A stretch of 64,000 nt of DNA, taken from positions 124,001 to 188,000 of IMG/VR virus record IMGVR_UViG_3300028920_000001; one strand, given 5' to 3'. Made by a program: the position numbers and the translations under genes. Positions within the stretch are counted from its first letter, which is position 1; each line of letters starts with the position of its first letter. The notes beneath the pieces are model-generated. The model saw nothing but the letters and a program-made list of their open reading frames with translations. It did no database searches and was not told the origin of the DNA. Positions 3,317-21,783 of the stretch are shown here, one piece after another.

Positions 3317-4558
3317 CTACCCTTTTACACAGATGATTTGCCGAAGTTCATGCTTAATCTCTACTAAATCCTTTTGGGCTTCCATCACTGCATCAATATC
3401 TTTGTACGCACCCGGAGTTTCGTCCAATACATCCTTGTCCTTACGACATTCAATGCCTTCAGTCGCCTGACGATGATCCTTGAGAGTGAATTGCTGTCGT
3501 GCTTGAGTGCGGCTCATCAAACGACCAGCGCCATGTGAAGCACTGGTGAAAGATTCCGGATTCCCAAGACCGCTAACAATGTAACTTCGTGCGCCCATCG
3601 ATCCTGGAATTATGCCGAGCTGTCCCTTTCGAGCTGAAATTGCGCCCTTCCGAGTGACCCAGATATTATGCTTGAAGTGATTTTCTCGAGTCACGTAATT
3701 ATGATGGCAGTTCACCTCTGTAACATCAGCATCAAATTTTGGAACCAGCTTTGATTTCCGAAGAGTTTTGACGATCGTCTCCATCATGAGTTCACGATTG
3801 ACCTGAGCGTAGCGTTGAGCCCATTGAACCGCTTTCATATATTGATCGAAATGCGGCGTTCCTTCCGGAAAGAACGATAAATCCATGTTAGGCAAATCAA
3901 CATAATATTTCTTCATAACATCCTTAGCTAGGCGAATAAAATAAGTACCAATTCGATTCCCGATTCCGCGAGATCCAGAGTGAAGCACAAGCCACACCTG
4001 ATCATTCTTGTCCAGGCACACTTCGATGAAATGATTGCCTGTGCCAAGCGTTCCAAGCTGCTTTTCTGGTCCTTTATGTTCACATGCTGGATTCGATTCT
4101 TTAATCTTTGTGTAACCAGGCTTAAGTTCCTCCCAAGCCACTTCAACTGCTACTGGCGGATTCTCCCATGAACCCGGATCACGTCCTTTAGCAAATCCGT
4201 GTGGAACCGCCTTTTCGATCAAAGCTCGAATTTTAGCCAAATCCTTGAGCATGGGAGCTCGAAGAGTAGTCTGCACGGCCATCATCCCACAACCTATATC
4301 GACCCCGACCGCCGAAGGAACCACTGCATCTTGGGTTGCAATCACGGTGCCGACTGTAGCACCAATCCCAGCATGCACATCCGGCATCACGGCAACATGT
4401 TTGTAAATGAAGGGAAGATCGGCTACGTAAGCAAGTTGGGCCTCAGCATAGTGCTCTACTGGAACACCAACTGTCCATCGCTTGATGAGATGCTTGTATC
4501 CCTTGGTGATTTCAATATTTCCATCGCGGAAAGTGTGTGGAACATTTTGATCAGTCAT
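3317..4558 (-). CDS. rtcB: RtcB family RNA ligase
   Basis: MPDVHAG, VGVDIGCG, LGTLGTGNHFIE, HSGSRG, HN, IIPGSMG, SHGAGR, DETPGAYK motifs. Confidence 0.97.
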   Translation of the reverse strand: MTDQNVPHTFRDGNIEITKGYKHLIKRWTVGVPVEHYAEAQLAYVADLPFIYKHVAVMPDVHAGIGATVGTVIATQDAVVPSAVGVDIGCGMMAVQTTLRAPMLKDLAKIRALIEKAVPHGFAKGRDPGSWENPPVAVEVAWEELKPGYTKIKESNPACEHKGPEKQLGTLGTGNHFIEVCLDKNDQVWLVLHSGSRGIGNRIGTYFIRLAKDVMKKYYVDLPNMDLSFFPEGTPHFDQYMKAVQWAQRYAQVNRELMMETIVKTLRKSKLVPKFDADVTEVNCHHNYVTRENHFKHNIWVTRKGAISARKGQLGIIPGSMGARSYIVSGLGNPESFTSASHGAGRLMSRTQARQQFTLKDHRQATEGIECRKDKDVLDETPGAYKDIDAVMEAQKDLVEIKHELRQIICVKG

Positions 4559-5416: not shown

Positions 5417-5769
5417 TACTCCGGAAAATCCTTAGGAAGTGTTTCAAACAAATCATTCAACGCGATGGTTGCTTTTTCAAACAGCTTTTCCATAGTTGAT
5501 TCACGGATGGTCATTGAAATTTCAATGCCCGGTTGAAGCCTTAAGTCGAATTCCCAGTTGATAGAAAGCGAATAGGCGTCCCGGTCTCCATCTTTTGAAT
5601 TTAACCAACGCATGAGATGAAGAGTAATGCGTTCATCTCGAAAATACCAATTGGCCCATTGGGCATCATCATGACGGGCCAACTTGAGTTTATGTCCTTG
5701 CCATTCAACAACTTCAGGAAGCCGAATCTTAGTTCGAGCCCATTTAACAGTGCGGTATTTCATGATCAC
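5416..5769 (-). CDS. hypothetical protein, paralog of 5766..6134
   Basis: Ends KATIALNDLFETLPKDFPE*. Confidence 0.75.
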   Translation of the reverse strand: MIMKYRTVKWARTKIRLPEVVEWQGHKLKLARHDDAQWANWYFRDERITLHLMRWLNSKDGDRDAYSLSINWEFDLRLQPGIEISMTIRESTMEKLFEKATIALNDLFETLPKDFPE

Positions 5770-6134
5770 TCCGGAAAATGTCTGGCCAATGAATTATAAA
5801 GTTTATTCAAACCCTTGGTTGCTACTTCAACTAGTTCTTCTAGAGAGTCTGCCGAATATTGAATGGGCCAATCTAAAAAATTAAATTCAATTAAAATACT
5901 CCAATCTTTCCTGTCTTTTTTATTCACGTATAAACTTGTCGGCCAATAATGTATTGATCTTTTTGGCCAAAAACGAATTGCAATTTTTAGTTGTTTAGAT
6001 CTGTCTTCCACATCTGAAAGCCATACAGCATTTAGATTAGGCCATGGTTGCAATTTTAGAATATGTCCTTGAAAATTAATTTTGGATGGGACTTTATATT
6101 TTTCTTTGTTGATGACGATGGTACGAAGTCTCAT
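5766..6134 (-). CDS. hypothetical protein, paralog of 5416..5769
   Basis: Ends VATKGLNKLYNSLARHFPE*; leaderless start after promoter motif. Confidence 0.75.
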   Translation of the reverse strand: MRLRTIVINKEKYKVPSKINFQGHILKLQPWPNLNAVWLSDVEDRSKQLKIAIRFWPKRSIHYWPTSLYVNKKDRKDWSILIEFNFLDWPIQYSADSLEELVEVATKGLNKLYNSLARHFPE

Positions 6135-6172: not shown

Positions 6173-6395
6173 GGGTGAGACAGTTTAGTCTCACCCGGAA
6201 ATTCGATATCTACAGAAGAACCTAAGCTGATCTGTAAAAACCGAACTCCAGGTGTCTTGAGGGCCAATAACTTGATTGGCCCTCGGCTACCCGGCATTTA
6301 CAGAGAAAGATAAATTTATCTGCAAAAGCCGAGGCCGAGAGATGGTTCCACCACCCTAGCATCTACTGACTAACCATAACCAGTAGAAGCTAGGG
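6173..6395 (-). ncRNA. structured non-coding RNA candidate (five hairpins)
   Basis: Stems at 6173-6196, 6204-6243, 6259-6284, 6292-6331, 6354-6395 directly 3' of tRNA-Phe. Confidence 0.55.
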
Positions 6396-6404
6396 TAGGT
6401 GTAG

Positions 6405-6477
6405 TGCTCCCGGCCGGAATCGAACCAGCGACGCCGAGCTCTTCAGGCTCGCGCTCTACCAACTGAGCTACAGGAGC
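6405..6477 (-). tRNA. tRNA-Phe(GAA)
   Basis: Cloverleaf; CGAGC-CTGAAGA-GCTCG; 3' A-CTA. Confidence 0.92.
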
Positions 6478-6494
6478 TGGAAAACCTTGACGGG

Positions 6495-6534
6495 CGGTGT
6501 CTATGGAAGAACCGAAGCTGATCCATAGAAACCG
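6495..6534 (-). repeat. 40-nt hairpin motif copy C
   Basis: CGGTTTCTATGGA-N14-TCCATAGACACCG with C(TTCG)G tetraloop; related to 6204, 6292, 13602. Confidence 0.7.
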
Positions 6535-6551
6535 CAGCTTTGCCGCCAAGG

Positions 6552-6626
6552 TGGTGACCGCAGGGGGAATTGAACCCGCCGTTGTCGGTGTGAAAAACCG
6601 ATTTCCTACCATTAGAAGATGCGGCC
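6552..6626 (-). tRNA. tRNA-Glu(TTC)
   Basis: Cloverleaf; TCGGT-TTTTCAC-ACCGA; encoded CCA. Confidence 0.92.
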
Positions 6627-6678
6627 GAACCTGTTTTTTAAAACAGATTGATTGAACCTGTTATGAAAAAGAAAATTC

Positions 6679-7230
6679 GTGAAGACTAAACGACGAATAA
6701 GAAAATGGAATACGGACTATTGGAGAAAACAATATATTATTAGAAAAGTTAAAGCAATTGAATATAAAGGAGGAAAATGTATAAAATGTGGATATAACAA
6801 ATGTTATGGAGCTTTAGAATTTCATCATAGAAATCCAAAAGAAAAAGAGTATGTGTGGTATAAATTAAGAAAAAGGAGTTGGAGAAATATTAAAGAAGAA
6901 TTAGATAAATGTGATTTAGTTTGTGCTAATTGTCATAGGGAAGCACATCATGATCCTTCTCTCTTAAAGAAAGCAAAGGAGTGGAGAGATAAAATTGATT
7001 CAAAAATCCCAATAATAGAAATAAACTGCAAAAATTGTGGAAAAGTATTTAGACCTGTGAGTCATAAAATCCAATTTTGTTCGCCTAAGTGTTCCGCTAA
7101 ATCTCAAGAAAGAGTTCAATGGCCAAAAAATTTGCCACTACTTGTAGCTAAGTTATCAAAAAGAGCGGTAGCATTCCAACTCGGTGTATCAGACAAAGCT
7201 GTAGCAAAAAGACTTCATAGCCATCATTAG
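6679..7230 (+). CDS. HNH endonuclease with Zn-finger and HTH tail
   Basis: CxxCGY..C..ALEFHH...CDLVCANCHREAH; GVSDKAVAKR HTH; GTG start. Confidence 0.88.
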   Translation: MKTKRRIRKWNTDYWRKQYIIRKVKAIEYKGGKCIKCGYNKCYGALEFHHRNPKEKEYVWYKLRKRSWRNIKEELDKCDLVCANCHREAHHDPSLLKKAKEWRDKIDSKIPIIEINCKNCGKVFRPVSHKIQFCSPKCSAKSQERVQWPKNLPLLVAKLSKRAVAFQLGVSDKAVAKRLHSHH

Positions 7231-7848
7231 TGTCCCGGGCGGGATTCGAATCCGCGCGTAAAGCAAAGGTCTCGTTTAGGAAACGCGCTTCCCGCTACGT
7301 AAATTTCACAACCTGCCATGGCGACTCCCGCCCACCCCTAGTTGTTACCAGTTAGCGTCTGGTGTAGAGTTGGAGGGTGAGCCAGATCGTCAAGAAGCTT
7401 GGCAATGGCGGGTCGAGGATCGCCTACCTGCTCAAGTCCGGGTACGTCTTGAAGGTCCACCGTTACAGAGCGACGAGGGATAACCAAGTCGAAGCCAGGA
7501 TTTACTATCTGGCTCAGAAGATGGGGGTCGGACACCACTTCGCTCGATGTCGGCTGAGTCCTCGTGGGCTCGTGATGGAGTACGTTGACACGTCGATACG
7601 AGACGACCCAGGGCGGGGCTTTCCTTGGTGGGTTCGTCTCATTGACAAGTATCAGGTGGGGCTCACCCGGGACGGTCGGCTGGTGGCCTACGACTACGCC
7701 AACCTGTGGCCCCAAGAGCCTACTATCTGGTACGACGGGTTGCGCTACTTCCTACTGAAAGAGGACTCGACGAAAGGACCCCTGGCGGACACTCTGCGCC
7801 TCTTTCCTGGTGTGAGTTTGAAGTGAGGTTCCTTTGAGCCACCGGGAC
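7231..7848 (-). ncRNA. tmRNA-like RNA with non-Ala acceptor stem
   Basis: Acceptor GTCCCGG/CCGGGAC-A; T-loop TTCGAAT; long discontinuous 5'/3' helix; pk1-like pseudoknot; GC-rich. Confidence 0.55.
7377..7826 (+). CDS. protein kinase-like protein (minimal/degenerate)
   Basis: GNGGSRIAY, VLKV, E, VMEYV, GRLVAYDYA motifs; GC3-rich codons; catalytic-loop region atypical. Confidence 0.55.
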   Translation: MSQIVKKLGNGGSRIAYLLKSGYVLKVHRYRATRDNQVEARIYYLAQKMGVGHHFARCRLSPRGLVMEYVDTSIRDDPGRGFPWWVRLIDKYQVGLTRDGRLVAYDYANLWPQEPTIWYDGLRYFLLKEDSTKGPLADTLRLFPGVSLK

Positions 7849-8085
7849 TTAACTCTCCATAATGAGAGTTACTAAAACTTCTTCGGGAGTAAGAATTATA
7901 AATCCAGACGTATAACCCGGCTTCATTTTTGCAATTCGTTCTATACACTGTTCACGGCTCGAGAAATGACAGGCATGTCTAATGCTGCTGGTATATTCAT
8001 ATTCATGCCCATCAGACCCTTTAATTAATTTTACATACCAGTTAGTCCCATATCCACCATTTTGAATCACCCATGGGTAGTTCAT
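7849..8085 (-). CDS. hypothetical protein, C-terminal motif
   Basis: Ends ILTPEEVLVTLIMES*. Confidence 0.8.
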   Translation of the reverse strand: MNYPWVIQNGGYGTNWYVKLIKGSDGHEYEYTSSIRHACHFSSREQCIERIAKMKPGYTSGFIILTPEEVLVTLIMES

Positions 8086-8828
8086 TAACCTAGCCGATTT
8101 TGAATAATGGGACGATTAAACCAATTATTATCGTCACTTTTAACTTTTTCAAATTCAGGACGTGATAATTTCATTCTACCAACCACCTTTTCATCATCCT
8201 CGATTCTGATATAAATTCCTTCCATCAAAATTGAATCATCAGTTCCTTCCAACGATTTCAAGTGTTTTTTCCAGTCGGGAGTCTTGAAATTAGAAGGACC
8301 AATGAATTGGGCGAAATTATTCACCTTGCCGAAGATTCCTTGGAAAAGAATCGGTGCAGTTGGTAATTCTGTTAAAGTAAATGCTTGACTGAGCAAAGCA
8401 TGCCGCTTTGGTGTCGAAAGAAACAAGTCATTTTCTTTATCATAAACATCATACTCGACAAAATAGCCAGGTAAAGCATCATAGAAGACACGATGCTTAG
8501 CATAGAGCCACTCACCAAATAAAAGATAACGAGTTCCAAGAATTCGCTCTAAATCAGTCTTTTTGGAATAAGACCATTGTTTGAATAAATTAAATTGGCG
8601 TTCTCTTGGTCCACCAACTAAATAATGGCCTCGACTTTGCAATACTAGCCTATCATCAACTTCGGTTTGAGGAACTTCAAAACTGATTCCAACATTAGCT
8701 CCGTCAAGCTTTTCAGTCACGTATACTTTAAGTTTACCCCATTCTTTATAAATGTCGTCTCGAAGAACTACCTCGAGCCGTTGAGTTTTCGGAAATTTAA
8801 TCATCTTCCTCCATAATATAATCAACAA
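8085..8828 (-). CDS. RNA ligase (Rnl2-like ATP-dependent nucleotidyltransferase)
   Basis: TEKLDGAN (motif I), FGEW, YDVYD, EGIYIR, RMKL; start likely MIKFPK (~8804). Confidence 0.88.
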   Translation of the reverse strand: MLIILWRKMIKFPKTQRLEVVLRDDIYKEWGKLKVYVTEKLDGANVGISFEVPQTEVDDRLVLQSRGHYLVGGPRERQFNLFKQWSYSKKTDLERILGTRYLLFGEWLYAKHRVFYDALPGYFVEYDVYDKENDLFLSTPKRHALLSQAFTLTELPTAPILFQGIFGKVNNFAQFIGPSNFKTPDWKKHLKSLEGTDDSILMEGIYIRIEDDEKVVGRMKLSRPEFEKVKSDDNNWFNRPIIQNRLG

Positions 8829-9111
8829 TTAATTCATAACCCATATGTTCAAGCTCATCATAATCATGACGTTCAGAGTCTATATACGCTCCGTCTTCAT
8901 TTATTCCAATATATTGGAAATAATTTTCATATAAACGAAGAGCTGTACGTATTTTTCCAACTTCATTATGAATTCGAACATGGCATAACACTTTAGACGG
9001 AATACTTTTAAAAATCCTTAACGCATTATCATCTGAAATTAAAACAGTTTCAGATCCGTGCTTTCTAAGCTGATCTCGAACATATTGAAATTTTGTTTCT
9101 GCAAGATTCAT
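8797..9111 (-). CDS. hypothetical protein, variant C-terminal motif
   Basis: Ends IVDYIMEEDD*. Confidence 0.75.
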   Translation of the reverse strand: MNLAETKFQYVRDQLRKHGSETVLISDDNALRIFKSIPSKVLCHVRIHNEVGKIRTALRLYENYFQYIGINEDGAYIDSERHDYDELEHMGYELIVDYIMEEDD

Positions 9112-9419
9112 TAGCTATCCATTATCAAAGCTACCATAGTTTCTTTTGGACCAAGGACTTCAAAATCTGAGAACGGATACTGTTTACTTACATCTGCTCT
9201 CCATCTTTCCAATTCAGATGTAAGAAGCATCAAAGCTTCATTTTCATCTAAGAAAAACGTAGCATTATAAATGTTACCTACAAATTTCATTCCTGTATTC
9301 GATCGTGCAAAATATACTTGCGCGCTTGGTTCATAACCACCAATTACTTTCCATTTTCCATTATATTTAATTACATAACCATAACCTTCGTCATGGGCTT
9401 TAAAATGAGCATCAGACAT
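9111..9419 (-). CDS. hypothetical protein, C-terminal motif
   Basis: Ends VLGPKETMVALIMDS*. Confidence 0.8.
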   Translation of the reverse strand: MSDAHFKAHDEGYGYVIKYNGKWKVIGGYEPSAQVYFARSNTGMKFVGNIYNATFFLDENEALMLLTSELERWRADVSKQYPFSDFEVLGPKETMVALIMDS

Positions 9420-9658
9420 TATGATTCCATCAATCTGGCTATCATAACCTCTGCTGGGTTTAAAATAGTGAAATCTGAACGTATACTATCTTCGTCAACT
9501 AACGCATCCTCAATAATTCTTTCACACACAAATTGGCTAGAAAATAAAGCTGCTTTAGCAATTTCATTTATATAATTCTCAGCAGCTCTATAACTATGTG
9601 TAAAATAACCTAGATCTTTATGCCTAATCACCCACTTATCACCCCAATTACACATCAC
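9419..9658 (-). CDS. hypothetical protein, C-terminal motif
   Basis: Ends ILNPAEVMIARLMES*. Confidence 0.8.
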   Translation of the reverse strand: MMCNWGDKWVIRHKDLGYFTHSYRAAENYINEIAKAALFSSQFVCERIIEDALVDEDSIRSDFTILNPAEVMIARLMES

Positions 9659-9921
9659 GACTCCATTACCGAAAGTAATAACACCTTTTCAGGAGCATAA
9701 ATCTCAAAATCGTTAGCAAGTAATCGTAGATTCCGTGACTTATACCATTTAATAGCTTGCTGAGCTTCTACATAGGACGAATAATGAGTAGCATCTTCAA
9801 TTCTGGGCACTAGGAAAAAAGTGCCGGTAGCATTATGACCAAAGTACCCATCATACCCATCTCCGTCAAAATAAACAATATAACCTATACCAATTTCCAT
9901 TTTATCAAATTTTAAGCCCAT
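9655..9921 (-). CDS. hypothetical protein, C-terminal motif
   Basis: Ends IYAPEKVLLLSVMES*; ORF-track start lies inside tRNA-Thr so moved to the first downstream ATG. Confidence 0.75.
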   Translation of the reverse strand: MGLKFDKMEIGIGYIVYFDGDGYDGYFGHNATGTFFLVPRIEDATHYSSYVEAQQAIKWYKSRNLRLLANDFEIYAPEKVLLLSVMES

Positions 9922-9937
9922 AGTGTAATTTACATAG

Positions 9938-10008
9938 AGCCACCCCAGAGAATCGAACTCCAATCAGTTGTTTACGAAACAACTGCTCTACCATTGAGCT
10001 ACGGTGGC
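9938..10008 (-). tRNA. tRNA-Thr(CGT)
   Basis: Cloverleaf; GTTGT-TTCGTAA-ACAAC; G7.G66 mismatch; 3' T-CTA. Confidence 0.88.
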
Positions 10009-10012
10009 ATAG

Positions 10013-10084
10013 CGCCCCTGAAGAGAATCGAACTCTCCTCGTCTGATCGACAGTCAGATAGCCTCACCAGATGCTTACAGGGGC
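10013..10084 (-). tRNA. tRNA-Asp(GTC)
   Basis: Cloverleaf; TCTGA-CTGTCGA-TCAGA; 3' G-CTA. Confidence 0.9.
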
Positions 10085-10746
10085 ATATTTAAAGCTTGTT
10101 GTTTAGCCCAGTATCCGACAGGAGGGGTTTTGATTCCTCGCTTGTCGCAACGTTTCTTAATGGCTTTGTCAGAAACGCCAAATTTCTTAGCCAACGTGGT
10201 GACAGGTGTTTTCCAAATTAATTTTGCCAATTGGACGTCAGATGGCCACTTAGTCTTTTCAGTAATATGATCAATATTGTGATTAAATTTCTTAGCCATC
10301 TTTTTATAACATTGTCTACTACAAAATGGATATTTAAGGTTTTTCTTATGAGATCTCTTAAACTGTTTTCCACAATTACTGCAAGTTAACTCTTCAGCTT
10401 CTTGCCTTCTATATTTTTCTATCTTCATACGTTGTTTTTCTATTAGTTTTTGTCGAAGCTCGTCATGAATTTCTCTATGACAATTGGCGCAAACCAATTC
10501 ACATTTATCCAATTCTTTTTTAATTCTCTCAAATGATCTAGAATCTCCTTTAGAAATCCTAAGTTCCTTCTTAGTTGGATCTCTATGATGAAAATCAAGA
10601 GCTACTAGACACTTACAATATCCACATCGTTCACATTTACCACCTTTATACTGAACTGCCCTTTCTTTAATTTTTCTTCGATGTTCAGCTACTCGTAGTC
10701 TAGCCAGTTCTTGCTTTAGTTTTAAATCCATACTAAATTTAACCAC
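10075..10746 (-). CDS. HNH endonuclease with Zn-finger and HTH tail
   Basis: Paralog of 6679..7230 (ALDFHH...CELVCANCHREIH; GVSDKAIKKR); stop overlaps tRNA-Asp 5' end. Confidence 0.88.
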   Translation of the reverse strand: MVKFSMDLKLKQELARLRVAEHRRKIKERAVQYKGGKCERCGYCKCLVALDFHHRDPTKKELRISKGDSRSFERIKKELDKCELVCANCHREIHDELRQKLIEKQRMKIEKYRRQEAEELTCSNCGKQFKRSHKKNLKYPFCSRQCYKKMAKKFNHNIDHITEKTKWPSDVQLAKLIWKTPVTTLAKKFGVSDKAIKKRCDKRGIKTPPVGYWAKQQALNMPL

Positions 10747-10779
10747 AAAATCGAACTTGTGTCAATTTTGCATTACAGG

Positions 10780-10852
10780 CCCCGAGGGAAGGATTCGAAC
10801 CCTCAATCAAACGGGTAACAACCGTCCGGCTTGCCAATTTGCCTACCTCGGG
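10780..10852 (-). tRNA. tRNA-Asn(GTT) copy 1
   Basis: Cloverleaf; GACGG-TTGTTAC-CCGTT. Confidence 0.88.
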
Positions 10853-10861
10853 AAAATTTGA

Positions 10862-10933
10862 AGGCCCCTCTCAGAATTGCACTGAGGACCCGCAGGTTAA
10901 CGGCCTGCCGCTCTGCTGCTGAGCTAAGGAGCC
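10862..10933 (-). tRNA. tRNA-Asn(GTT) copy 2, atypical T-loop
   Basis: GCAGG-CCGTTAA-CCTGC; T-loop TGCAATT; D-loop lacks GG. Confidence 0.75.
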
Positions 10934-10938
10934 ACTAT

Positions 10939-10967
10939 ATTCTTGACGTGAGTTCACGTCAAAAGAA
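10939..10967. terminator. hairpin upstream of tRNA-Asn cluster
   Basis: TTGACGTG-AGTT-CACGTCAA inverted repeat. Confidence 0.35.
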
Positions 10968-11019
10968 TCGTTTGTTTAATGATAAATTGATAAAATTATG
11001 CAGTCTTGAATGGGTTCTT

Positions 11020-11238
11020 TCATGTTTTCATCACCATATCAATAGTTATTTTTCCTTGAGTTTCTTCACAAGTTTCAGGACAAGGCTCACCGCCATGCAC
11101 TGGATGATAAGGTTCTTCTACCATGTAGCGTATTTGATTCTCATCGTCTCTGAGTTGCATAGTCAGCACACCACAATGCTCACATGTTGCAACTATAACT
11201 TTAGAAGTTCTTCTGATTGTTTTCCATTTGTGTTTCAT
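11020..11238 (-). CDS. small HxW/CxxC zinc protein, C-terminal motif
   Basis: MKHKW...CEHCG...C; ends TIDMVMKT*. Confidence 0.8.
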   Translation of the reverse strand: MKHKWKTIRRTSKVIVATCEHCGVLTMQLRDDENQIRYMVEEPYHPVHGGEPCPETCEETQGKITIDMVMKT

Positions 11239-11471
11239 AACGTCATGATTCGCTTAACTAATTCTTCGTCACAGTCAAGCGAAACTTTATATAAATCTAA
11301 TTCATCATCTGTGGGTGGAAAACAAGTATATTTCTCCCCACTGACATGATATCGACTTGTGACAAAATTACCACCACACCTATTACATCCAAATTTAATC
11401 TTCATCCAATGTGGAGCATGAGCTTCATCTGGTGGAATTTCTCGAGGCTGTCTCTTCCAATCATGGTTCAT
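11235..11471 (-). CDS. small HxW/CxxC zinc protein, C-terminal motif
   Basis: MNHDW...CNRCG...DC; ends LVKRIMTL*. Confidence 0.8.
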   Translation of the reverse strand: MNHDWKRQPREIPPDEAHAPHWMKIKFGCNRCGGNFVTSRYHVSGEKYTCFPPTDDELDLYKVSLDCDEELVKRIMTL

Positions 11472-11662
11472 TTTGTAATAATTTTCTTAGGGGTCTTTGT
11501 GGTCACTTCCGCTATCTCATCCAGTATTCTAAATATCTCCGCATCTTCATTAGCTTGGGCTTCTGCTTTAAATAAACAAGATGCACAGATTCTTTTAGAT
11601 TTATCCTGTGGATTTGAGGTAAATCTGGTAAACCCATGGATTGGACAATATTGTGAACTCAT
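11468..11662 (-). CDS. small CxxHG/CxxC protein
   Basis: YCPIHG...ICASC; paralog of 11659..11841. Confidence 0.75.
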   Translation of the reverse strand: MSSQYCPIHGFTRFTSNPQDKSKRICASCLFKAEAQANEDAEIFRILDEIAEVTTKTPKKIITK

Positions 11663-11841
11663 CGGGTCATGATTTTCTTTATAAGTGAAGTTTTGGTTTG
11701 CATTGAAACAGCCAAACAGACTACACAGATTGGATCAGTATACAGTGGCTTTTCATCAATTGATTGTGGAAGCCGAACATGCTTAGTGTTCCCATGTTTT
11801 TGACAATAACGAATACCAACAGATTTCAGTCTGGCAGTCAT
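11659..11841 (-). CDS. small CxxHG/CxxC protein, C-terminal motif
   Basis: YCQKHG...ICVVC; ends LIKKIMTR*. Confidence 0.75.
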   Translation of the reverse strand: MTARLKSVGIRYCQKHGNTKHVRLPQSIDEKPLYTDPICVVCLAVSMQTKTSLIKKIMTR

Positions 11842-12332
11842 AATTGCATAATGTCCTGAATAAACATACGCCGAAAGGCATCAAGTAAAAGCTCAGCAGT
11901 TAAATCTATCAATTGGCAATCAATCGGAACTACGGTATCTCTGAACTCCGAACTAGAACACCAATAATACCGTTTAAAAAATTCACGCTGGCGATTCAAT
12001 AAAGTTTGGCGGCAGTATTCCTCAAGAAAGAAATATGGTCCCAGTCCAATCCGGCCACGGTCATATTCGAATTGAAATTTAATTAGTCTACCATTCCAGT
12101 CATCCCCGATTATCACTCGATCTCCATCATACGACCCTGCCATCATGGCCTTCGTCTTTTCAAAAAACGGGTCACTGATGGAAAGGAAACGGATACGTTG
12201 GATGATCTTCTTTAGTCTTGGGATAGCTTCTTCCTCATGGAAGATGAGCCATTCCTCCGGGTCCGGTCGAACAATTTTTCCCATGATTGCCTCGATAAGT
12301 GAGACAAACAGGGGGACCTCGGCATAGATCAA
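11838..12332 (-). CDS. hypothetical protein, C-terminal motif
   Basis: Ends FIQDIMQL*. Confidence 0.75.
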   Translation of the reverse strand: MIYAEVPLFVSLIEAIMGKIVRPDPEEWLIFHEEEAIPRLKKIIQRIRFLSISDPFFEKTKAMMAGSYDGDRVIIGDDWNGRLIKFQFEYDRGRIGLGPYFFLEEYCRQTLLNRQREFFKRYYWCSSSEFRDTVVPIDCQLIDLTAELLLDAFRRMFIQDIMQL

Positions 12333-12353
12333 TCATCACCTTGAATTATACAA

Positions 12354-12977
12354 TCAAGCTCTAGATTTCCAGATTTCAATAATATTAGAATGATATCTCT
12401 CTAGACGATTCCCTAAAGATTCGGAATGTGGTTTTTGCTTTGGCTGAAGATGGACAGCATCTTCACCTAAATAGCAAAGATAATCTGCAATCATACTTCG
12501 ATGGCACTTCCACCATAAGCATTCACAGCACATGATTCCAAGATGCTGAGATTTGGATCGTTCAATCAATTTATCGATCCCATCCAAAAATTCTGGCAGA
12601 GTCATAAACCAACTATAGTCCCACAAGCCCTGATTCCACCAATAAGGCTGATCAGATGGTTGATTATTCTTACCTATCCGTTGTTTAGGGAATTTTCCAT
12701 TGGAATAAGCTCGAACATCAACTAGATGAGCTTCCATCTGATCAGCTAAATAAAGATGCTGATTATTCCATCCACCTAATTCAGGCCAGAATTCATAATT
12801 GATATTGGCTTCAGGAAGCCAATACTCGAGCTCCGCTTTTTTAAATTGATCCCAACGGCTAGTTGGATGTGATCTCACATCAACAATTACCTCAATCGGT
12901 TCAGCTAACTTGAGGAATTCGTCTTTTTCTAGCTTAGAATGTCCTATTGTATAAATCATATTTCCATCACCAACCAA
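12354..12977 (-). CDS. DUF488 family protein
   Basis: IYTIGHS, DVRSHP.SR, MCCECLWWKCHR motifs; start likely MIYTIG (~12959). Confidence 0.85.
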   Translation of the reverse strand: MVGDGNMIYTIGHSKLEKDEFLKLAEPIEVIVDVRSHPTSRWDQFKKAELEYWLPEANINYEFWPELGGWNNQHLYLADQMEAHLVDVRAYSNGKFPKQRIGKNNQPSDQPYWWNQGLWDYSWFMTLPEFLDGIDKLIERSKSQHLGIMCCECLWWKCHRSMIADYLCYLGEDAVHLQPKQKPHSESLGNRLERYHSNIIEIWKSRA

Positions 12978-13270
12978 ACCAAAAGATCTGGTTCTAAATC
13001 AGAATCTAATCTACTGGACCAGCCCATCAAGCGACTATCTAGATAATCTCCACCGCCTTGTTCATATACCCTAATTTTAGCTTGATAGCCTACTTTAGGT
13101 AAGTGGCTAATACGATCTCCATAGACTCGATACTGACCCTCCATAGTAATCACGTCCGCTGTAACCCAGTCAAGAGTGTCTATATCTTTGAAATTTATTA
13201 TGATCCCTCGTAATTCTTGATACCTTCCAACTCTATCAGCTGGATATTCAAGATTAGGATCAAAAATCAT
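12956..13270 (-). CDS. hypothetical protein, C-terminal motif
   Basis: Ends LVWLVMEI*. Confidence 0.75.
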   Translation of the reverse strand: MIFDPNLEYPADRVGRYQELRGIIINFKDIDTLDWVTADVITMEGQYRVYGDRISHLPKVGYQAKIRVYEQGGGDYLDSRLMGWSSRLDSDLEPDLLVWLVMEI

Positions 13271-13479
13271 TATTCCTCCATAAATCTAGCTATCTGACCA
13301 AGTATACATTCTTCTTCAGTGTGAAATCTTGAAATCACGAAACAACCACAATAAATGCATTCCGATAGATATTTAGTCGTTTCAGGTCCGAGAATTCCAT
13401 CGGGTTTAATACCAACTTTATGCTGATATCCTGCAGTTATTCCTGCTCTTACATCATCTAAATAAGTAACATAACTCAC
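13270..13479 (-). CDS. small protein with peptidoglycan-binding-like segment, C-terminal motif
   Basis: YQHKVGIKPDGILGPET resembles PG-binding repeat; CIYC; ends QIARFMEE*; start moved out of tRNA-like gene to GTG 13479. Confidence 0.6.
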   Translation of the reverse strand: MSYVTYLDDVRAGITAGYQHKVGIKPDGILGPETTKYLSECIYCGCFVISRFHTEEECILGQIARFMEE

Positions 13480-13496
13480 GATTGAATTTACATTAG

Positions 13497-13682
13497 TACC
13501 CCGGACGGGAATCGAACCCGCTCCGCACCCGTGGTAGGGCACAACCCGTGGCCTTCAAGGCGATCAACTCTCTATCTCCAGCGGGCAAAGACCACGCTAT
13601 CCGACATTTACAGGTGAACTCGAGCTCATCTGTAAAAGCCGTTTAACCTGACCTAAAGCTCTGACCGTTAAGCTACCGAGGT
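13497..13682 (-). ncRNA. tRNA-like RNA with ~125-nt structured insertion replacing the anticodon loop
   Basis: Acceptor ACCTCGG/CCGGGGT-A, D-arm GCTT-AACGGTCA-GAGC, T-arm GCGGG-TTCGATT-CCCGT; 186 nt. Confidence 0.75.
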
Positions 13683-13685
13683 ATT

Positions 13686-13761
13686 TGGCACCCCACAGGA
13701 GACTTGAACTCCTATCTTGTGATCGAGAATCACAAATCCTGAGCCATTAGACGAGTGGGGC
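13686..13761 (-). tRNA. tRNA-Glu(CTC)
   Basis: Cloverleaf; TGTGA-TTCTCGA-TCACA; encoded CCA. Confidence 0.92.
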
Positions 13762-16334: not shown

Positions 16335-16362
16335 TTTTACACTGAAGCATAAAGAACTTACG
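16335..16362 (-). promoter_or_regulatory. phage promoter-like motif (tandem P2)
   Basis: CGTAAG-N13-AGTGTAAAA. Confidence 0.55.
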
Positions 16363-20967: not shown

Positions 20968-21249
20968 AAGCGGTAGAGTTGCAATGTAAAATCTTTACAG
21001 CAATTCAGCATAACTATCGAGAATGTAAGATTATAATGCTATTCAGACGACACAAAGATCTGAACACAGCAGCCCTTTTATGGGTTAAAATTAGGGAAGC
21101 AATTGGAATAAGATATGGTCCAGATATTTGAATCTAAGATGACCTATCCTACAGACAACGATTAATTCCAAAATCATATTCTCTCAGGAGAAAATATCTC
21201 CTGCCATATCAATATCCCAACCTAGAAAATTGCCACCCAAGGAAAAGAA

Positions 21250-21783
21250 ATGAACGATCAAGCTGAACAAGCCGTTGAGAATCAGAATGAATCTGCAGCA
21301 AAGGAGCCTGAAAACGAAGATCGTGCTCCGTTTGAAGATGATGTCCTTTTGGAGGAAATGGTAAGAGCATTAGTTACTTATCCAGAAGATGTTGAAGTCA
21401 AACAAACTATAGATGGTGAACGGAAAGAACTCATGGTCTATTGTAATTCCGATGATGTCGGAAAGGTCATTGGAAAACATGGACGTGTAGTCAATATGAT
21501 CAATGATTTCTTCGGAGTAATTGGATTCCGAAATGGATATCAGGTTACCGTTCAGGTCCAAGGAGATACCAACTTCTTCCGGAAGAATCCTGGAGTGCGT
21601 CCTCCCCAGCAACGCCATCCTGCACCATATCCACCGCAGCAGCAGCCTCCTTATTACCCACCTCCTCAAGCTTATGGGTATCCTCCTCCAGGTCCTCCGC
21701 CACAACGTCATTATCGCCGTCAACCCCAGGTAGAGTACCAGGGAAGACAAAATGGTGGTGGCTTCCGAAGGAATAACGACTAG
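21250..21783 (+). CDS. KhpA-like KH-domain RNA-binding protein with P/Q/Y-rich tail
   Basis: LVTYPEDVEV...DDVGKVIGKHGR (GxxG loop); low-complexity C-terminus. Confidence 0.85.
   Translation: MNDQAEQAVENQNESAAKEPENEDRAPFEDDVLLEEMVRALVTYPEDVEVKQTIDGERKELMVYCNSDDVGKVIGKHGRVVNMINDFFGVIGFRNGYQVTVQVQGDTNFFRKNPGVRPPQQRHPAPYPPQQQPPYYPPPQAYGYPPPGPPPQRHYRRQPQVEYQGRQNGGGFRRNND

What the first reader, a model, noticed from the sequence alone, without database searches (positions are those of the whole stretch)
6204..13641. A covarying 40-nt hairpin (13-14-13) repeated four times in the tRNA region
Seen (minus strand): copies at 6204-6243, 6292-6331, 6495-6534 and 13602-13641 have the form CGGYTTYTRYRGA-N14-YCYRTARAYRYCG. 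Arm and loop lengths are identical. Copy C has compensatory changes (TACAGA/TCTGTA to TATGGA/TCCATA, and a C-G swap). Pair 5 is always a pyrimidine-pyrimidine mismatch, G.U pairs appear on the minus strand, and three loops close as AGC-N4-GTT, one with C(UUCG)G. Inference: a protein-binding RNA module reused in an ncRNA, a tRNA spacer and the tRNA-mimic insert.
Basis: seen in the sequence. Interest (0 to 1): 0.62.

Follow-up and report, generated by a model that had tools for sequence, protein, structure and literature searches.

The report
Conserved RNA rod hairpin in phage
A 427-kb phage carries five copies of a previously undescribed 36-40-nt RNA hairpin, with a conserved U-U mismatch, capping long helices around its tRNA and RNA-repair genes; it is clearly a selected RNA structure, but what binds or cuts it is still unknown.

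Summary
All four hairpins are at the stated coordinates, with none expected by chance. A diverged fifth copy (E, 6357-6392) lies between them. These five are the only copies in the 426,960-bp phage genome.

Eleven distinct sequences from this phage, two near-identical strains and one relative at about 86% identity give 92% pairing, against 33-56% when the partners are slid. Seven of 13 stem pairs carry compensatory double changes, and position 5 is a pyrimidine-pyrimidine mismatch in 11 of 11. G-U pairs outnumber A-C by 17 to 1 on the minus strand, so this is an RNA (or minus-strand) element, not a symmetric DNA site.

Each copy caps a 24-28-bp rod whose lower stem is unrelated in sequence. 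Four copies flank tRNA-Phe, upstream of a conserved small ORF and RtcB. The fifth (D) sits in a tRNA-like RNA that the relative lacks.

There is no Rfam match and no copy in other phages. The phage also encodes Ro60 and a family of canonical Y-RNA-like helices whose sequence differs from the module, so the module is not the usual Ro60 site.

Best reading (0.4): a sequence-specific protein-docking helix. Main rival: an RNase III-type processing site.

The parts
6204..6243 (-). Module copy A (13-14-13), tip of rod A
6292..6331 (-). Module copy B (13-14-13; loop differs, 15 nt in the relative)
6357..6392 (-). Module copy E (13-10-13), a diverged fifth copy at the tip of 'rod 1'. It keeps the U-U mismatch and has three further compensatory pairs.
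   Evidence: 43.3 bits with model R2
6495..6534 (-). Module copy C, tip of the rod that fills the tRNA-Glu/tRNA-Phe spacer
13602..13641 (-). Module copy D, tip of a long arm of the tRNA-like D RNA
6192..6254 (-). Rod A: the module plus about 10 bp of unrelated lower stem
6280..6341 (-). Rod B: the module plus an 8-bp lower stem. One lower pair is C-G in the window and U-A in the relative.
6349..6401 (-). Rod E: six of the seven compensatory double changes against the relative fall in this rod
6485..6551 (-). Rod C: a 9-bp lower stem (compensatory changes in the relative), a 7-nt bulge, then the module. It starts directly after the encoded CCA of tRNA-Glu and is followed by UUUUCCA and then tRNA-Phe.
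13589..13654 (-). Rod D: about 26 bp with small internal loops, placed where a tRNA has its anticodon arm
6173..6403 (-). Structured ncRNA downstream of tRNA-Phe: rod E, rod B, hairpin 6261-6282, rod A, hairpin 6173-6196. The folding z-score is -10.5.
13496..13682 (-). D RNA: a tRNA-like scaffold with a 7-bp acceptor stem, a D arm and a canonical T arm (UUCGAUU), plus rod D and two further arms. Rfam does not recognise it as a tRNA. It is absent from the related lineage.
13542..13589 (-). Y-RNA-like sequence blocks inside the D RNA: the 3'-strand motif UCUUUGCCCG, a GGAGAU...UUGAUCGCC block and CGGGUUG
6404..6477 (-). tRNA-Phe(GAA), sandwiched between rods C and E
6552..6626 (-). tRNA-Glu(UUC), directly 5' of rod C
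13686..13761 (-). tRNA-Glu(CUC), directly 5' of the D RNA
5766..6134 (-). ORF122, the conserved gene that starts about 40 nt after the ncRNA (dN/dS 0.19 against the relative). No family match. It is a candidate partner, or the gene whose leader the rods form.
3317..4558 (-). RtcB RNA ligase, same strand, 1.6 kb downstream of the ncRNA

Best explanation
The element is a reusable RNA helix, made from minus-strand transcripts of the phage's tRNA and RNA-repair island. It forms the distal 16 or so base pairs of five rod-shaped hairpins. It has a fixed U-pyrimidine mismatch near the centre of each rod, three base pairs that never change orientation, and usually a 2x2 pyrimidine internal loop under a short capped stem. 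I take it to be a docking site for a sequence-specific RNA-binding protein. Four tandem sites flank tRNA-Phe at the head of the ORF122-RtcB gene string, and one site is grafted onto a tRNA-like RNA that also carries Y-RNA-like sequence blocks. Shown here: the RNA structure, the strand, the copy number, the covariation, the conserved mismatch and the synteny. Inferred: that a protein reads it. The partner is unknown; candidates are the adjacent ORF122, the phage Ro60, or a host protein.
For: There are five copies and no others in 427 kb. In 11 distinct sequences 91.6% of cells pair, against 33-56% with slid partners. Seven of 13 pairs carry double changes, and no shuffle reaches the observed covariation score. 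Position 5 is unpaired in 11 of 11, even in copy E where the neighbouring pairs changed. Pairs 6:36 (U-A), 8:34 (U-A) and 12:30 (G-C) are invariant, while the pairs around them flip. There are 17 G-U cells against 1 A-C on the minus strand. The module boundary is sharp: the flanks pair but are unrelated in sequence. The apical tetraloops vary freely, so the tip is only a cap. Rods of this kind are not a general feature of the island's tRNA junctions. The surrounding ncRNA is under structural selection: of 18 pairs changed against the relative, 7 are compensatory, 9 keep pairing and 2 break. ORF122 is the conserved downstream neighbour in both lineages, while the other small ORFs turn over. The phage uses modular protein-binding RNAs elsewhere: a full-length Ro60 gene and at least seven Y-RNA-like helices, several of them grafted into tRNA scaffolds.
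Against: No binding protein has been identified. ORF122 has no recognisable RNA-binding domain and its structure model is poor. Only two diverged lineages exist, so invariant pairs could reflect shared ancestry. The phage encodes no dsRBD, L7Ae or RNase III. Copy D is dispensable in the relative. Copy B has a different upper part. No expression data could be obtained.
Confidence: 0.4

Rival explanations
1. The rods are RNase III-type processing signals. Host RNase III, or another double-strand-specific nuclease, would cut each rod near its central mismatch. This would separate the tRNAs from one another and from the downstream ORF122-RtcB mRNA, as in the conserved hairpin families of phages T7 and SP82.
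For: Each rod is 24-28 bp, about two helical turns, with the mismatch near the middle. All copies lie at junctions between a tRNA and the next transcript unit. Paralogous, sequence-related hairpins at intercistronic sites are the classical signature of phage RNase III sites (my own knowledge of T7 and SP82).
Against: The phage encodes no RNase III or dsRBD. About 37 other tRNA junctions in the island lack such rods. Three tandem sites (E, B, A) within 230 nt are more than processing needs. Cutting rod D would split the D RNA. The conserved mismatch and internal loop could equally serve as anti-determinants that protect the rods from RNase III.
Confidence: 0.25
2. The rods are structural elements with no specific partner. 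They could act as folding insulators or exonuclease barriers that keep neighbouring tRNAs and the downstream mRNA stable. Their sequence similarity would then only reflect local duplication and gene conversion.
For: Four copies lie within 360 nt and the fifth 7 kb away. Copy A in a strain 99.7% identical overall carries the variant of the diverged lineage, which suggests exchange between alleles. The tetraloops include stable UNCG types.
Against: A destabilising mismatch kept in 11 of 11 sequences, and orientation-invariant pairs next to freely covarying ones, are not expected of a helix that only needs stability.
Confidence: 0.18
3. The module is a second kind of Ro60 (Rsr) binding or adaptor site, and the rod-bearing RNAs belong to the phage's Ro60/Y-RNA/RtcB repair particle.
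For: The phage has a full-length Ro60. The D RNA combines the module with Y-like sequence blocks on a tRNA-like body. An ncRNA upstream of RtcB recalls the Salmonella rsr-yrlBA-rtcBA operon (PMC7790460, PMC4201824).
Against: The module lacks the GNCGAA / GGUC(C)GA-type 5'-strand motif (PMC4201824), whereas seven other RNAs in this genome carry it. No Y_RNA, YrlA or sbRNA model matches the rods even at E up to 10. The Ro60 gene is 31-39 kb away. The Y-like blocks in D are rearranged, and one of them is not conserved between strains.
Confidence: 0.1
4. It is a DNA-level element: a pseudo-palindromic site for a homing endonuclease or recombinase, or a REP/MITE-like mobile hairpin.
For: HNH and LAGLIDADG endonuclease genes lie in the region. 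The tRNA-Phe/rod E block is swapped in the relative, and the D RNA is an indel bracketed by a GGGGU repeat.
Against: The 17:1 excess of G-U over A-C is strand-specific. Pairing continues into unrelated flanks, with compensatory changes there too. There is no Y1 transposase. There are only five copies, all on the transcribed strand.
Confidence: 0.04

Closest known systems
Y RNA / YrlA modular RNAs bound by Ro60 (Rsr)
   Same: Both are modular ncRNAs in which a conserved helix with a non-Watson-Crick feature is joined to a tRNA-like domain. Both are encoded with RtcB-type RNA repair genes. The same phage carries genuine Y-like helices, and one module copy shares an RNA with Y-like sequence blocks.
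   Different: The module's sequence is unrelated to the Ro60-binding motif. It is a capped hairpin tip, not a stem formed by the RNA's two ends. It is not next to the Ro60 gene, and no Rfam Y-family model matches it.
RNase III processing hairpins of phage T7 (R1.1 type) and SP82
   Same: Both are families of sequence-related hairpins of about two helical turns with a central non-paired feature, at intercistronic positions of phage polycistronic transcripts.
   Different: No cleavage data exist for the module. The copies are clustered at one locus rather than spread over gene boundaries. There is a 1x1 mismatch rather than an asymmetric internal loop, and one copy sits inside a tRNA-like RNA.
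Stable small RNAs in phage tRNA clusters (T4 species 1 and 2 RNAs) and large phage ncRNAs next to tRNAs (ROOL, GOLLD)
   Same: These are also structured RNAs of unknown function, co-transcribed with phage tRNA genes.
   Different: There is no sequence or Rfam similarity. The module is a short repeated unit, not a single large fold. This comparison rests on my own knowledge, not on a test made here.

Membership tests
Y RNA / YrlA Ro60-binding helix | 5'-strand motif GNCGAAN0-1G (bacterial) or GGUC(C)GA with a bulged C (metazoan) | tested here: not met
   The motif is absent from both arms of all five copies. It is present in seven other RNAs of this genome as CGGGYCGGAG / UYUUURCCCG. Motif definition from PMC4201824.
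Y RNA / YrlA Ro60-binding helix | [quoted passage not shown] | tested here: not met
   The module is always the loop-capped distal end of a hairpin.
Y RNA / YrlA Ro60-binding helix | A match to the Rfam models Y_RNA, YrlA or sbRNA | tested here: not met
   These models give no hit on the rods at E up to 10. The true Y-like RNAs of the genome hit RF01656 at 19-25 bits.
Y RNA / YrlA Ro60-binding helix | Encoded next to the Ro60 gene | tested here: not met
   The Ro60 gene lies at G000:97892-99673. The modules lie at genome positions 130204-137641, which is 31-39 kb away.
RNase III processing hairpin | About 20 bp or more of mostly continuous double-stranded RNA | tested here: met
   The rods are 24-28 bp.
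RNase III processing hairpin | Cleavage by RNase III giving staggered ends | not testable with these tools
The phage has no RNase III gene, and the host is unknown.
REP / RAYT or MITE-like palindromic repeat | An associated Y1 (RAYT/IS200) transposase and many dispersed copies | tested here: not met
   There is no Y1_Tnp match. There are five copies, all within 7.4 kb and on one strand.
CRISPR repeat mimic (solitary repeat, RNA anti-CRISPR) | Close similarity to a CRISPR repeat present in the system | tested here: not met
   This lineage's 31-nt CRISPR-like repeat shares only a CAGAUC...UCUG core with copies A and C.
Archaeal-type tRNA intron (bulge-helix-bulge) | A splicing endonuclease (EndA) and a BHB motif at the exon junctions | tested here: not met
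   There is no tRNA_int_endo match. ARAGORN reads D as tRNA-Thr(UGU) with a 106-nt intron. A near-identical strain contradicts this: it changes the anticodon and breaks the proposed stem.

The most novel reading that the evidence does not exclude
The module is the handle of a previously unknown adaptor system. A phage protein (ORF122 or another) would bind the U-U-mismatch helix. Through RNAs such as D, which join the module to a tRNA-like body and Y-RNA-like blocks, it would be coupled to the phage's Ro60/RtcB RNA-repair machinery or to tRNA-recognising enzymes. The module would then be a second kind of Y-RNA-like tether.
Probability: 0.12. Interest if true: 0.8.

Novelty: new variant of a known kind. 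Interest (0 to 1): 0.58.

Why it matters
Huge phages carry large tRNA and RNA-repair islands whose non-coding content is almost unexplored. This locus offers a compact element with strong covariation support and an obvious experimental handle: a 40-nt helix with a fixed mismatch. It sits beside RtcB in a genome that also encodes Ro60 and an unusually rich set of Y-RNA-like RNAs. Some of those have normal tRNA topology, which has not been described. Finding the module's partner could reveal how such phages organise tRNA processing or repair during infection.

Tried and rejected
- **Rfam:** the gathering-threshold and permissive scans of both loci gave only tRNAs and noise-level miRNA and sRNA hits.
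- **Phage database:** a BLAST of the locus matched only tRNA-Phe.
- **Pattern scans:** IMG/VR gave nothing. The prokaryote genome collection gave one chance match inside a Bacteroidales ORF whose arms do not pair.
- **Model R1:** it found nothing near the RtcB genes of 80 other phages or in five huge-phage records. It also found nothing in seven phage loci that carry YrlA-type RNAs.
- **G001 hit:** one 18-26-bit hit in the huge phage G001 lies inside an AT-rich zinc-finger ORF on the non-coding strand. I treat it as chance.
- **Close relatives:** protein word searches with ORF122 and the helicase found none in IMG/VR.
- **Repeat search:** blastn-short self-comparison of the island was too insensitive to find module-like repeats.
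- **ORF122 structure:** the AlphaFold single-sequence model was unusable (pLDDT 42). The ESM Atlas gave only weak HPF-like neighbours (TM about 0.46).
- **Signals:** the promoter and terminator scans were uninformative.
- **Hairpin scan:** the first whole-genome run timed out and was redone on 74-150 kb.
- **tRNA-Tyr idea:** I considered that the 3' arm (CUGUAAA in B and D) mimics a tRNA-Tyr anticodon loop. I dropped it because the motif is not conserved in copies A, C and E and lies inside the helix.
Full report
**Setting.** The window is bases 124001-188000 of a complete 426,960-bp virus record with direct terminal repeats. The first 20 kb is a minus-strand island of tRNA genes and small ORFs. 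It also holds EF-Tu (1069-2268), RtcB (3317-4558), an Rnl2-type RNA ligase (8085-8828), DUF488, a DEAD-box helicase and two HNH endonucleases. The whole genome has 37 tRNAs by ARAGORN and a tmRNA.

**The observation.**
None of 100 shuffles gave a match, and there are no other matches in the genome.
- Folding shows that each copy is the distal part of a longer helix. The lower stem pairs but is unrelated in sequence between copies, so the module boundary at C1-G40 is sharp.
- A scan of 74-150 kb for very stable single hairpins found rods A, B and C plus a fourth, 'rod 1', directly after tRNA-Phe.
- Rod 1 proved to be a diverged fifth copy, E (6357-6392, 13-10-13). It keeps the U-U mismatch at position 5. 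It differs from the consensus mostly by paired changes (pairs 1:40, 2:39 and 11:30).
- A model built from 11 sequences (copy E among them) finds these five copies in the genome and nothing else, with E scoring 43 bits.

**Relatives.**
- The motif is absent from IMG/VR.
- It is also absent from the neighbourhood of RtcB in 80 other phages and from five huge-phage records.
- The metagenome scan found two near-identical strains: L104 (99.7% identical) and L102 (98.7%). It also found one diverged lineage, L103, at about 86% identity.
- A homologue of the adjacent ORF led to a 17-kb syntenic contig of that lineage, L117.
- In these relatives, substitutions in the module keep pairing. Examples are G-C to A-U at pair 11:30 of copy C, U-G to C-G at pair 7:34 of copy A, and A-U to G-U at pair 9:32 of copy A.
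- The apical tetraloops change freely (UUAG, UACG, UAUG, UUCG, UACA).
- Over the 11 distinct sequences, 91.6% of cells pair, against 33-56% when the 3' partners are slid. Seven of 13 pairs show double changes. Position 5:37 is unpaired in all 11. Pairs 6:36, 8:34 and 12:30 never vary.
- In the nine-sequence set, 17 cells are G-U on the minus strand and only one is A-C. The plus strand would therefore carry 17 mismatches. The functional form is the minus strand, which is the strand of all neighbouring tRNAs and genes.

**Context of the copies.**
- Four copies surround tRNA-Phe. Rod C fills the 74-nt spacer after the encoded CCA of tRNA-Glu(UUC) and is followed by UUUUCCA and then tRNA-Phe.
- Rods E, B and A, with two small G+C-rich hairpins, form a 230-nt ncRNA that ends about 40 nt before ORF122.
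- I threaded the relative's sequence onto the predicted structure of this ncRNA. Of 18 changed pairs, 7 are compensatory, 9 keep pairing through G-U and 2 break.
- ORF122 is a real gene (dN/dS 0.19). It is the conserved downstream neighbour in both lineages, while the small ORFs between it and RtcB differ.
- In the relative, the block holding tRNA-Phe and rod E is a strongly diverged allele. Its tRNA-Phe(GAA) has a non-canonical T loop.

**The D RNA (13496-13682).**
- It has a 7-bp acceptor stem, a D arm and a canonical T arm. Rod D sits where the anticodon arm belongs, and there are two further arms.
- Strain L102 shows pair-preserving changes in the T stem, in rod D's lower stem and in a hairpin GYGCCC/GGGYGC.
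- ARAGORN with introns allowed reads D as tRNA-Thr(UGU) with a 106-nt intron. In L102, however, the supposed anticodon changes to UGC and a stem pair breaks. Rfam does not call D a tRNA. I therefore take D to be a tRNA-like ncRNA.
- The related lineage lacks D. There, tRNA-Glu(CUC) is followed directly by the trailer ACUAAUGUAAAUUCAAUC, which in the window follows D. The extra segment is bracketed by a GGGGU direct repeat. D is thus an accessory unit.

**Ro60 and Y RNAs.**
- With RtcB so near, I tested a Y-RNA reading. The genome encodes a full-length Ro60 with TROVE and Ro60-type vWA domains, about 25 kb upstream of the window.
- Next to that gene lies a stem-bulge RNA that hits the Rfam model of nematode sbRNAs, which I know as Y-RNA homologues. 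Two further RNAs hit the same model over their full length, at 19-25 bits, below the gathering score.
- A motif search showed a family with the strands CGGGYCGGAG...GGUUAUCG and UYUUURCCCG. This gives a helix GGGY[C]GG / UU-RCCC, laid out like the metazoan GGUC[C]GA / UU-GACC.
- Three members have the normal orientation, and one of these encloses a tRNA-like domain. Three members are circularly permuted, sitting as inserts in the anticodon region of tRNA-shaped RNAs with open acceptor ends.
- The same 5'-strand motif occurs in seven other phage contigs. Several of them (L110, L113) show the classical YrlA layout, L115 has free tandem Y RNAs, and some I did not examine further (PMC4201824; bioRxiv 10.1101/312249).
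- D carries the 3'-strand motif and a GGAGAU...UUGAUCGCC block, but in a rearranged form.
- The canonical Ro60 site in this phage is therefore a different sequence from the 40-nt module. The module is at most a second, different module on such RNAs.

**What it most likely is.**
- The data establish a selected, strand-specific RNA helix. Its features go beyond stability: a mismatch kept in every copy and lineage, orientation-invariant pairs beside covarying ones, a sharp boundary and a free tip. That pattern is typical of base-specific recognition of a distorted helix, so I favour a protein-docking role (0.4).
- The main rival is an RNase III-type processing signal (0.25). The rods are two helical turns long with the mismatch near the centre, and they lie at junctions between tRNAs and the next transcript unit. 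Against this, the phage has no RNase III or dsRBD, such rods are not general at the island's tRNA junctions, and three tandem copies exceed what processing needs.
- A purely structural role (0.18), a second Ro60 site (0.1) and a DNA-level site (0.04) are less likely, for the reasons given under the rivals.

**Limits.** Only two diverged lineages exist, so the covariation counts include inherited changes. 

Noticed in passing
G000:C1:96110-96177, 118879-118941, 112752-112879 (all minus strand; outside the window): Three Y-RNA-like stem-bulge RNAs (5' CGGGYCGGAG..GGUUAUCG, 3' UYUUURCCCG). Each hits the Rfam nematode sbRNA model over its full length at 19-25 bits, below the gathering score. One lies 1.7 kb from a full-length Ro60 gene (TROVE + vWA_Ro60, G000:97892-99673). 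One encloses a complete tRNA-like domain.
   Followed up: partly
G000:C1:95978-96105, 112506-112633, 123257-123354 (minus strand; outside the window): tRNA-shaped RNAs with open acceptor ends whose anticodon region holds a circularly permuted Y-like helix (UUURCCCG, a 3-4-nt loop, then CGGGYCG..GGUUAUCG). In effect these are YrlA-type RNAs with normal tRNA topology. ARAGORN reads them as intron-bearing tRNAs (Ala or Cys, Leu, Ser). The phage has RtcB but no EndA.
   Followed up: partly
window 21035-21065 (minus); also G000:12855, 45959, 67890, 195103, 376368; L102:4478-5064: Six solitary copies of a 31-nt CRISPR-like repeat (GTTCAGATCTTTGTGCCGTCTGAATRGCATT) are dispersed in the genome. The near-identical strain L102 has an array of at least five such repeats with spacers of about 30-40 nt, at the place corresponding to window position 16350.
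   Followed up: partly
L103:405-500 and L117:9640-9735, corresponding to window 6404-6477: In the related lineage tRNA-Phe(GAA) is replaced by a strongly diverged allele with a non-canonical T loop (AGCGUAA) and a D loop without GG. The flanking rods are kept.
   Followed up: no
window 13279-13689 compared with L117:3659-3677: The D RNA and a small downstream ORF (about 13270-13479) are missing from the related lineage. The D segment is bracketed by a GGGGU direct repeat formed by the 3' acceptor ends of tRNA-Glu(CUC) and of D.
   Followed up: yes
window 6679-7230 (+) and 10075-10746 (-): Two HNH homing-endonuclease genes are embedded among the tRNA genes. There is also a LAGLIDADG_2 protein somewhere in window 20-64 kb. 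These fit the mosaic differences between the lineages.
   Followed up: no
G000:C1:194717-195065 (+) and 80541-80615 (-); outside the window: A tRNA-like gene with an insert of about 263 nt, possibly a group I intron, lies next to tRNA-Lys. There is also a 75-nt tRNA with anticodon UCA, which ARAGORN calls SeC and which looks more like an opal suppressor.
   Followed up: no
window 20000-64000, exact place not determined: One ORF matches the anti-Pycsar protein Apyc1 family (E 3e-33). Another is a KhpA/B-type KH protein (21250-21783, plus strand), with a second KH protein at G000:213342-213557.
   Followed up: partly
window 13493-13496, 6401-6404 and other tRNA 3' ends: Several tRNA and tRNA-like genes without an encoded CCA end with discriminator A followed by CUA(A). 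This may be a shared 3'-processing signal. tRNA-Glu(UUC) and tRNA-Glu(CUC) encode CCA instead.
   Followed up: no
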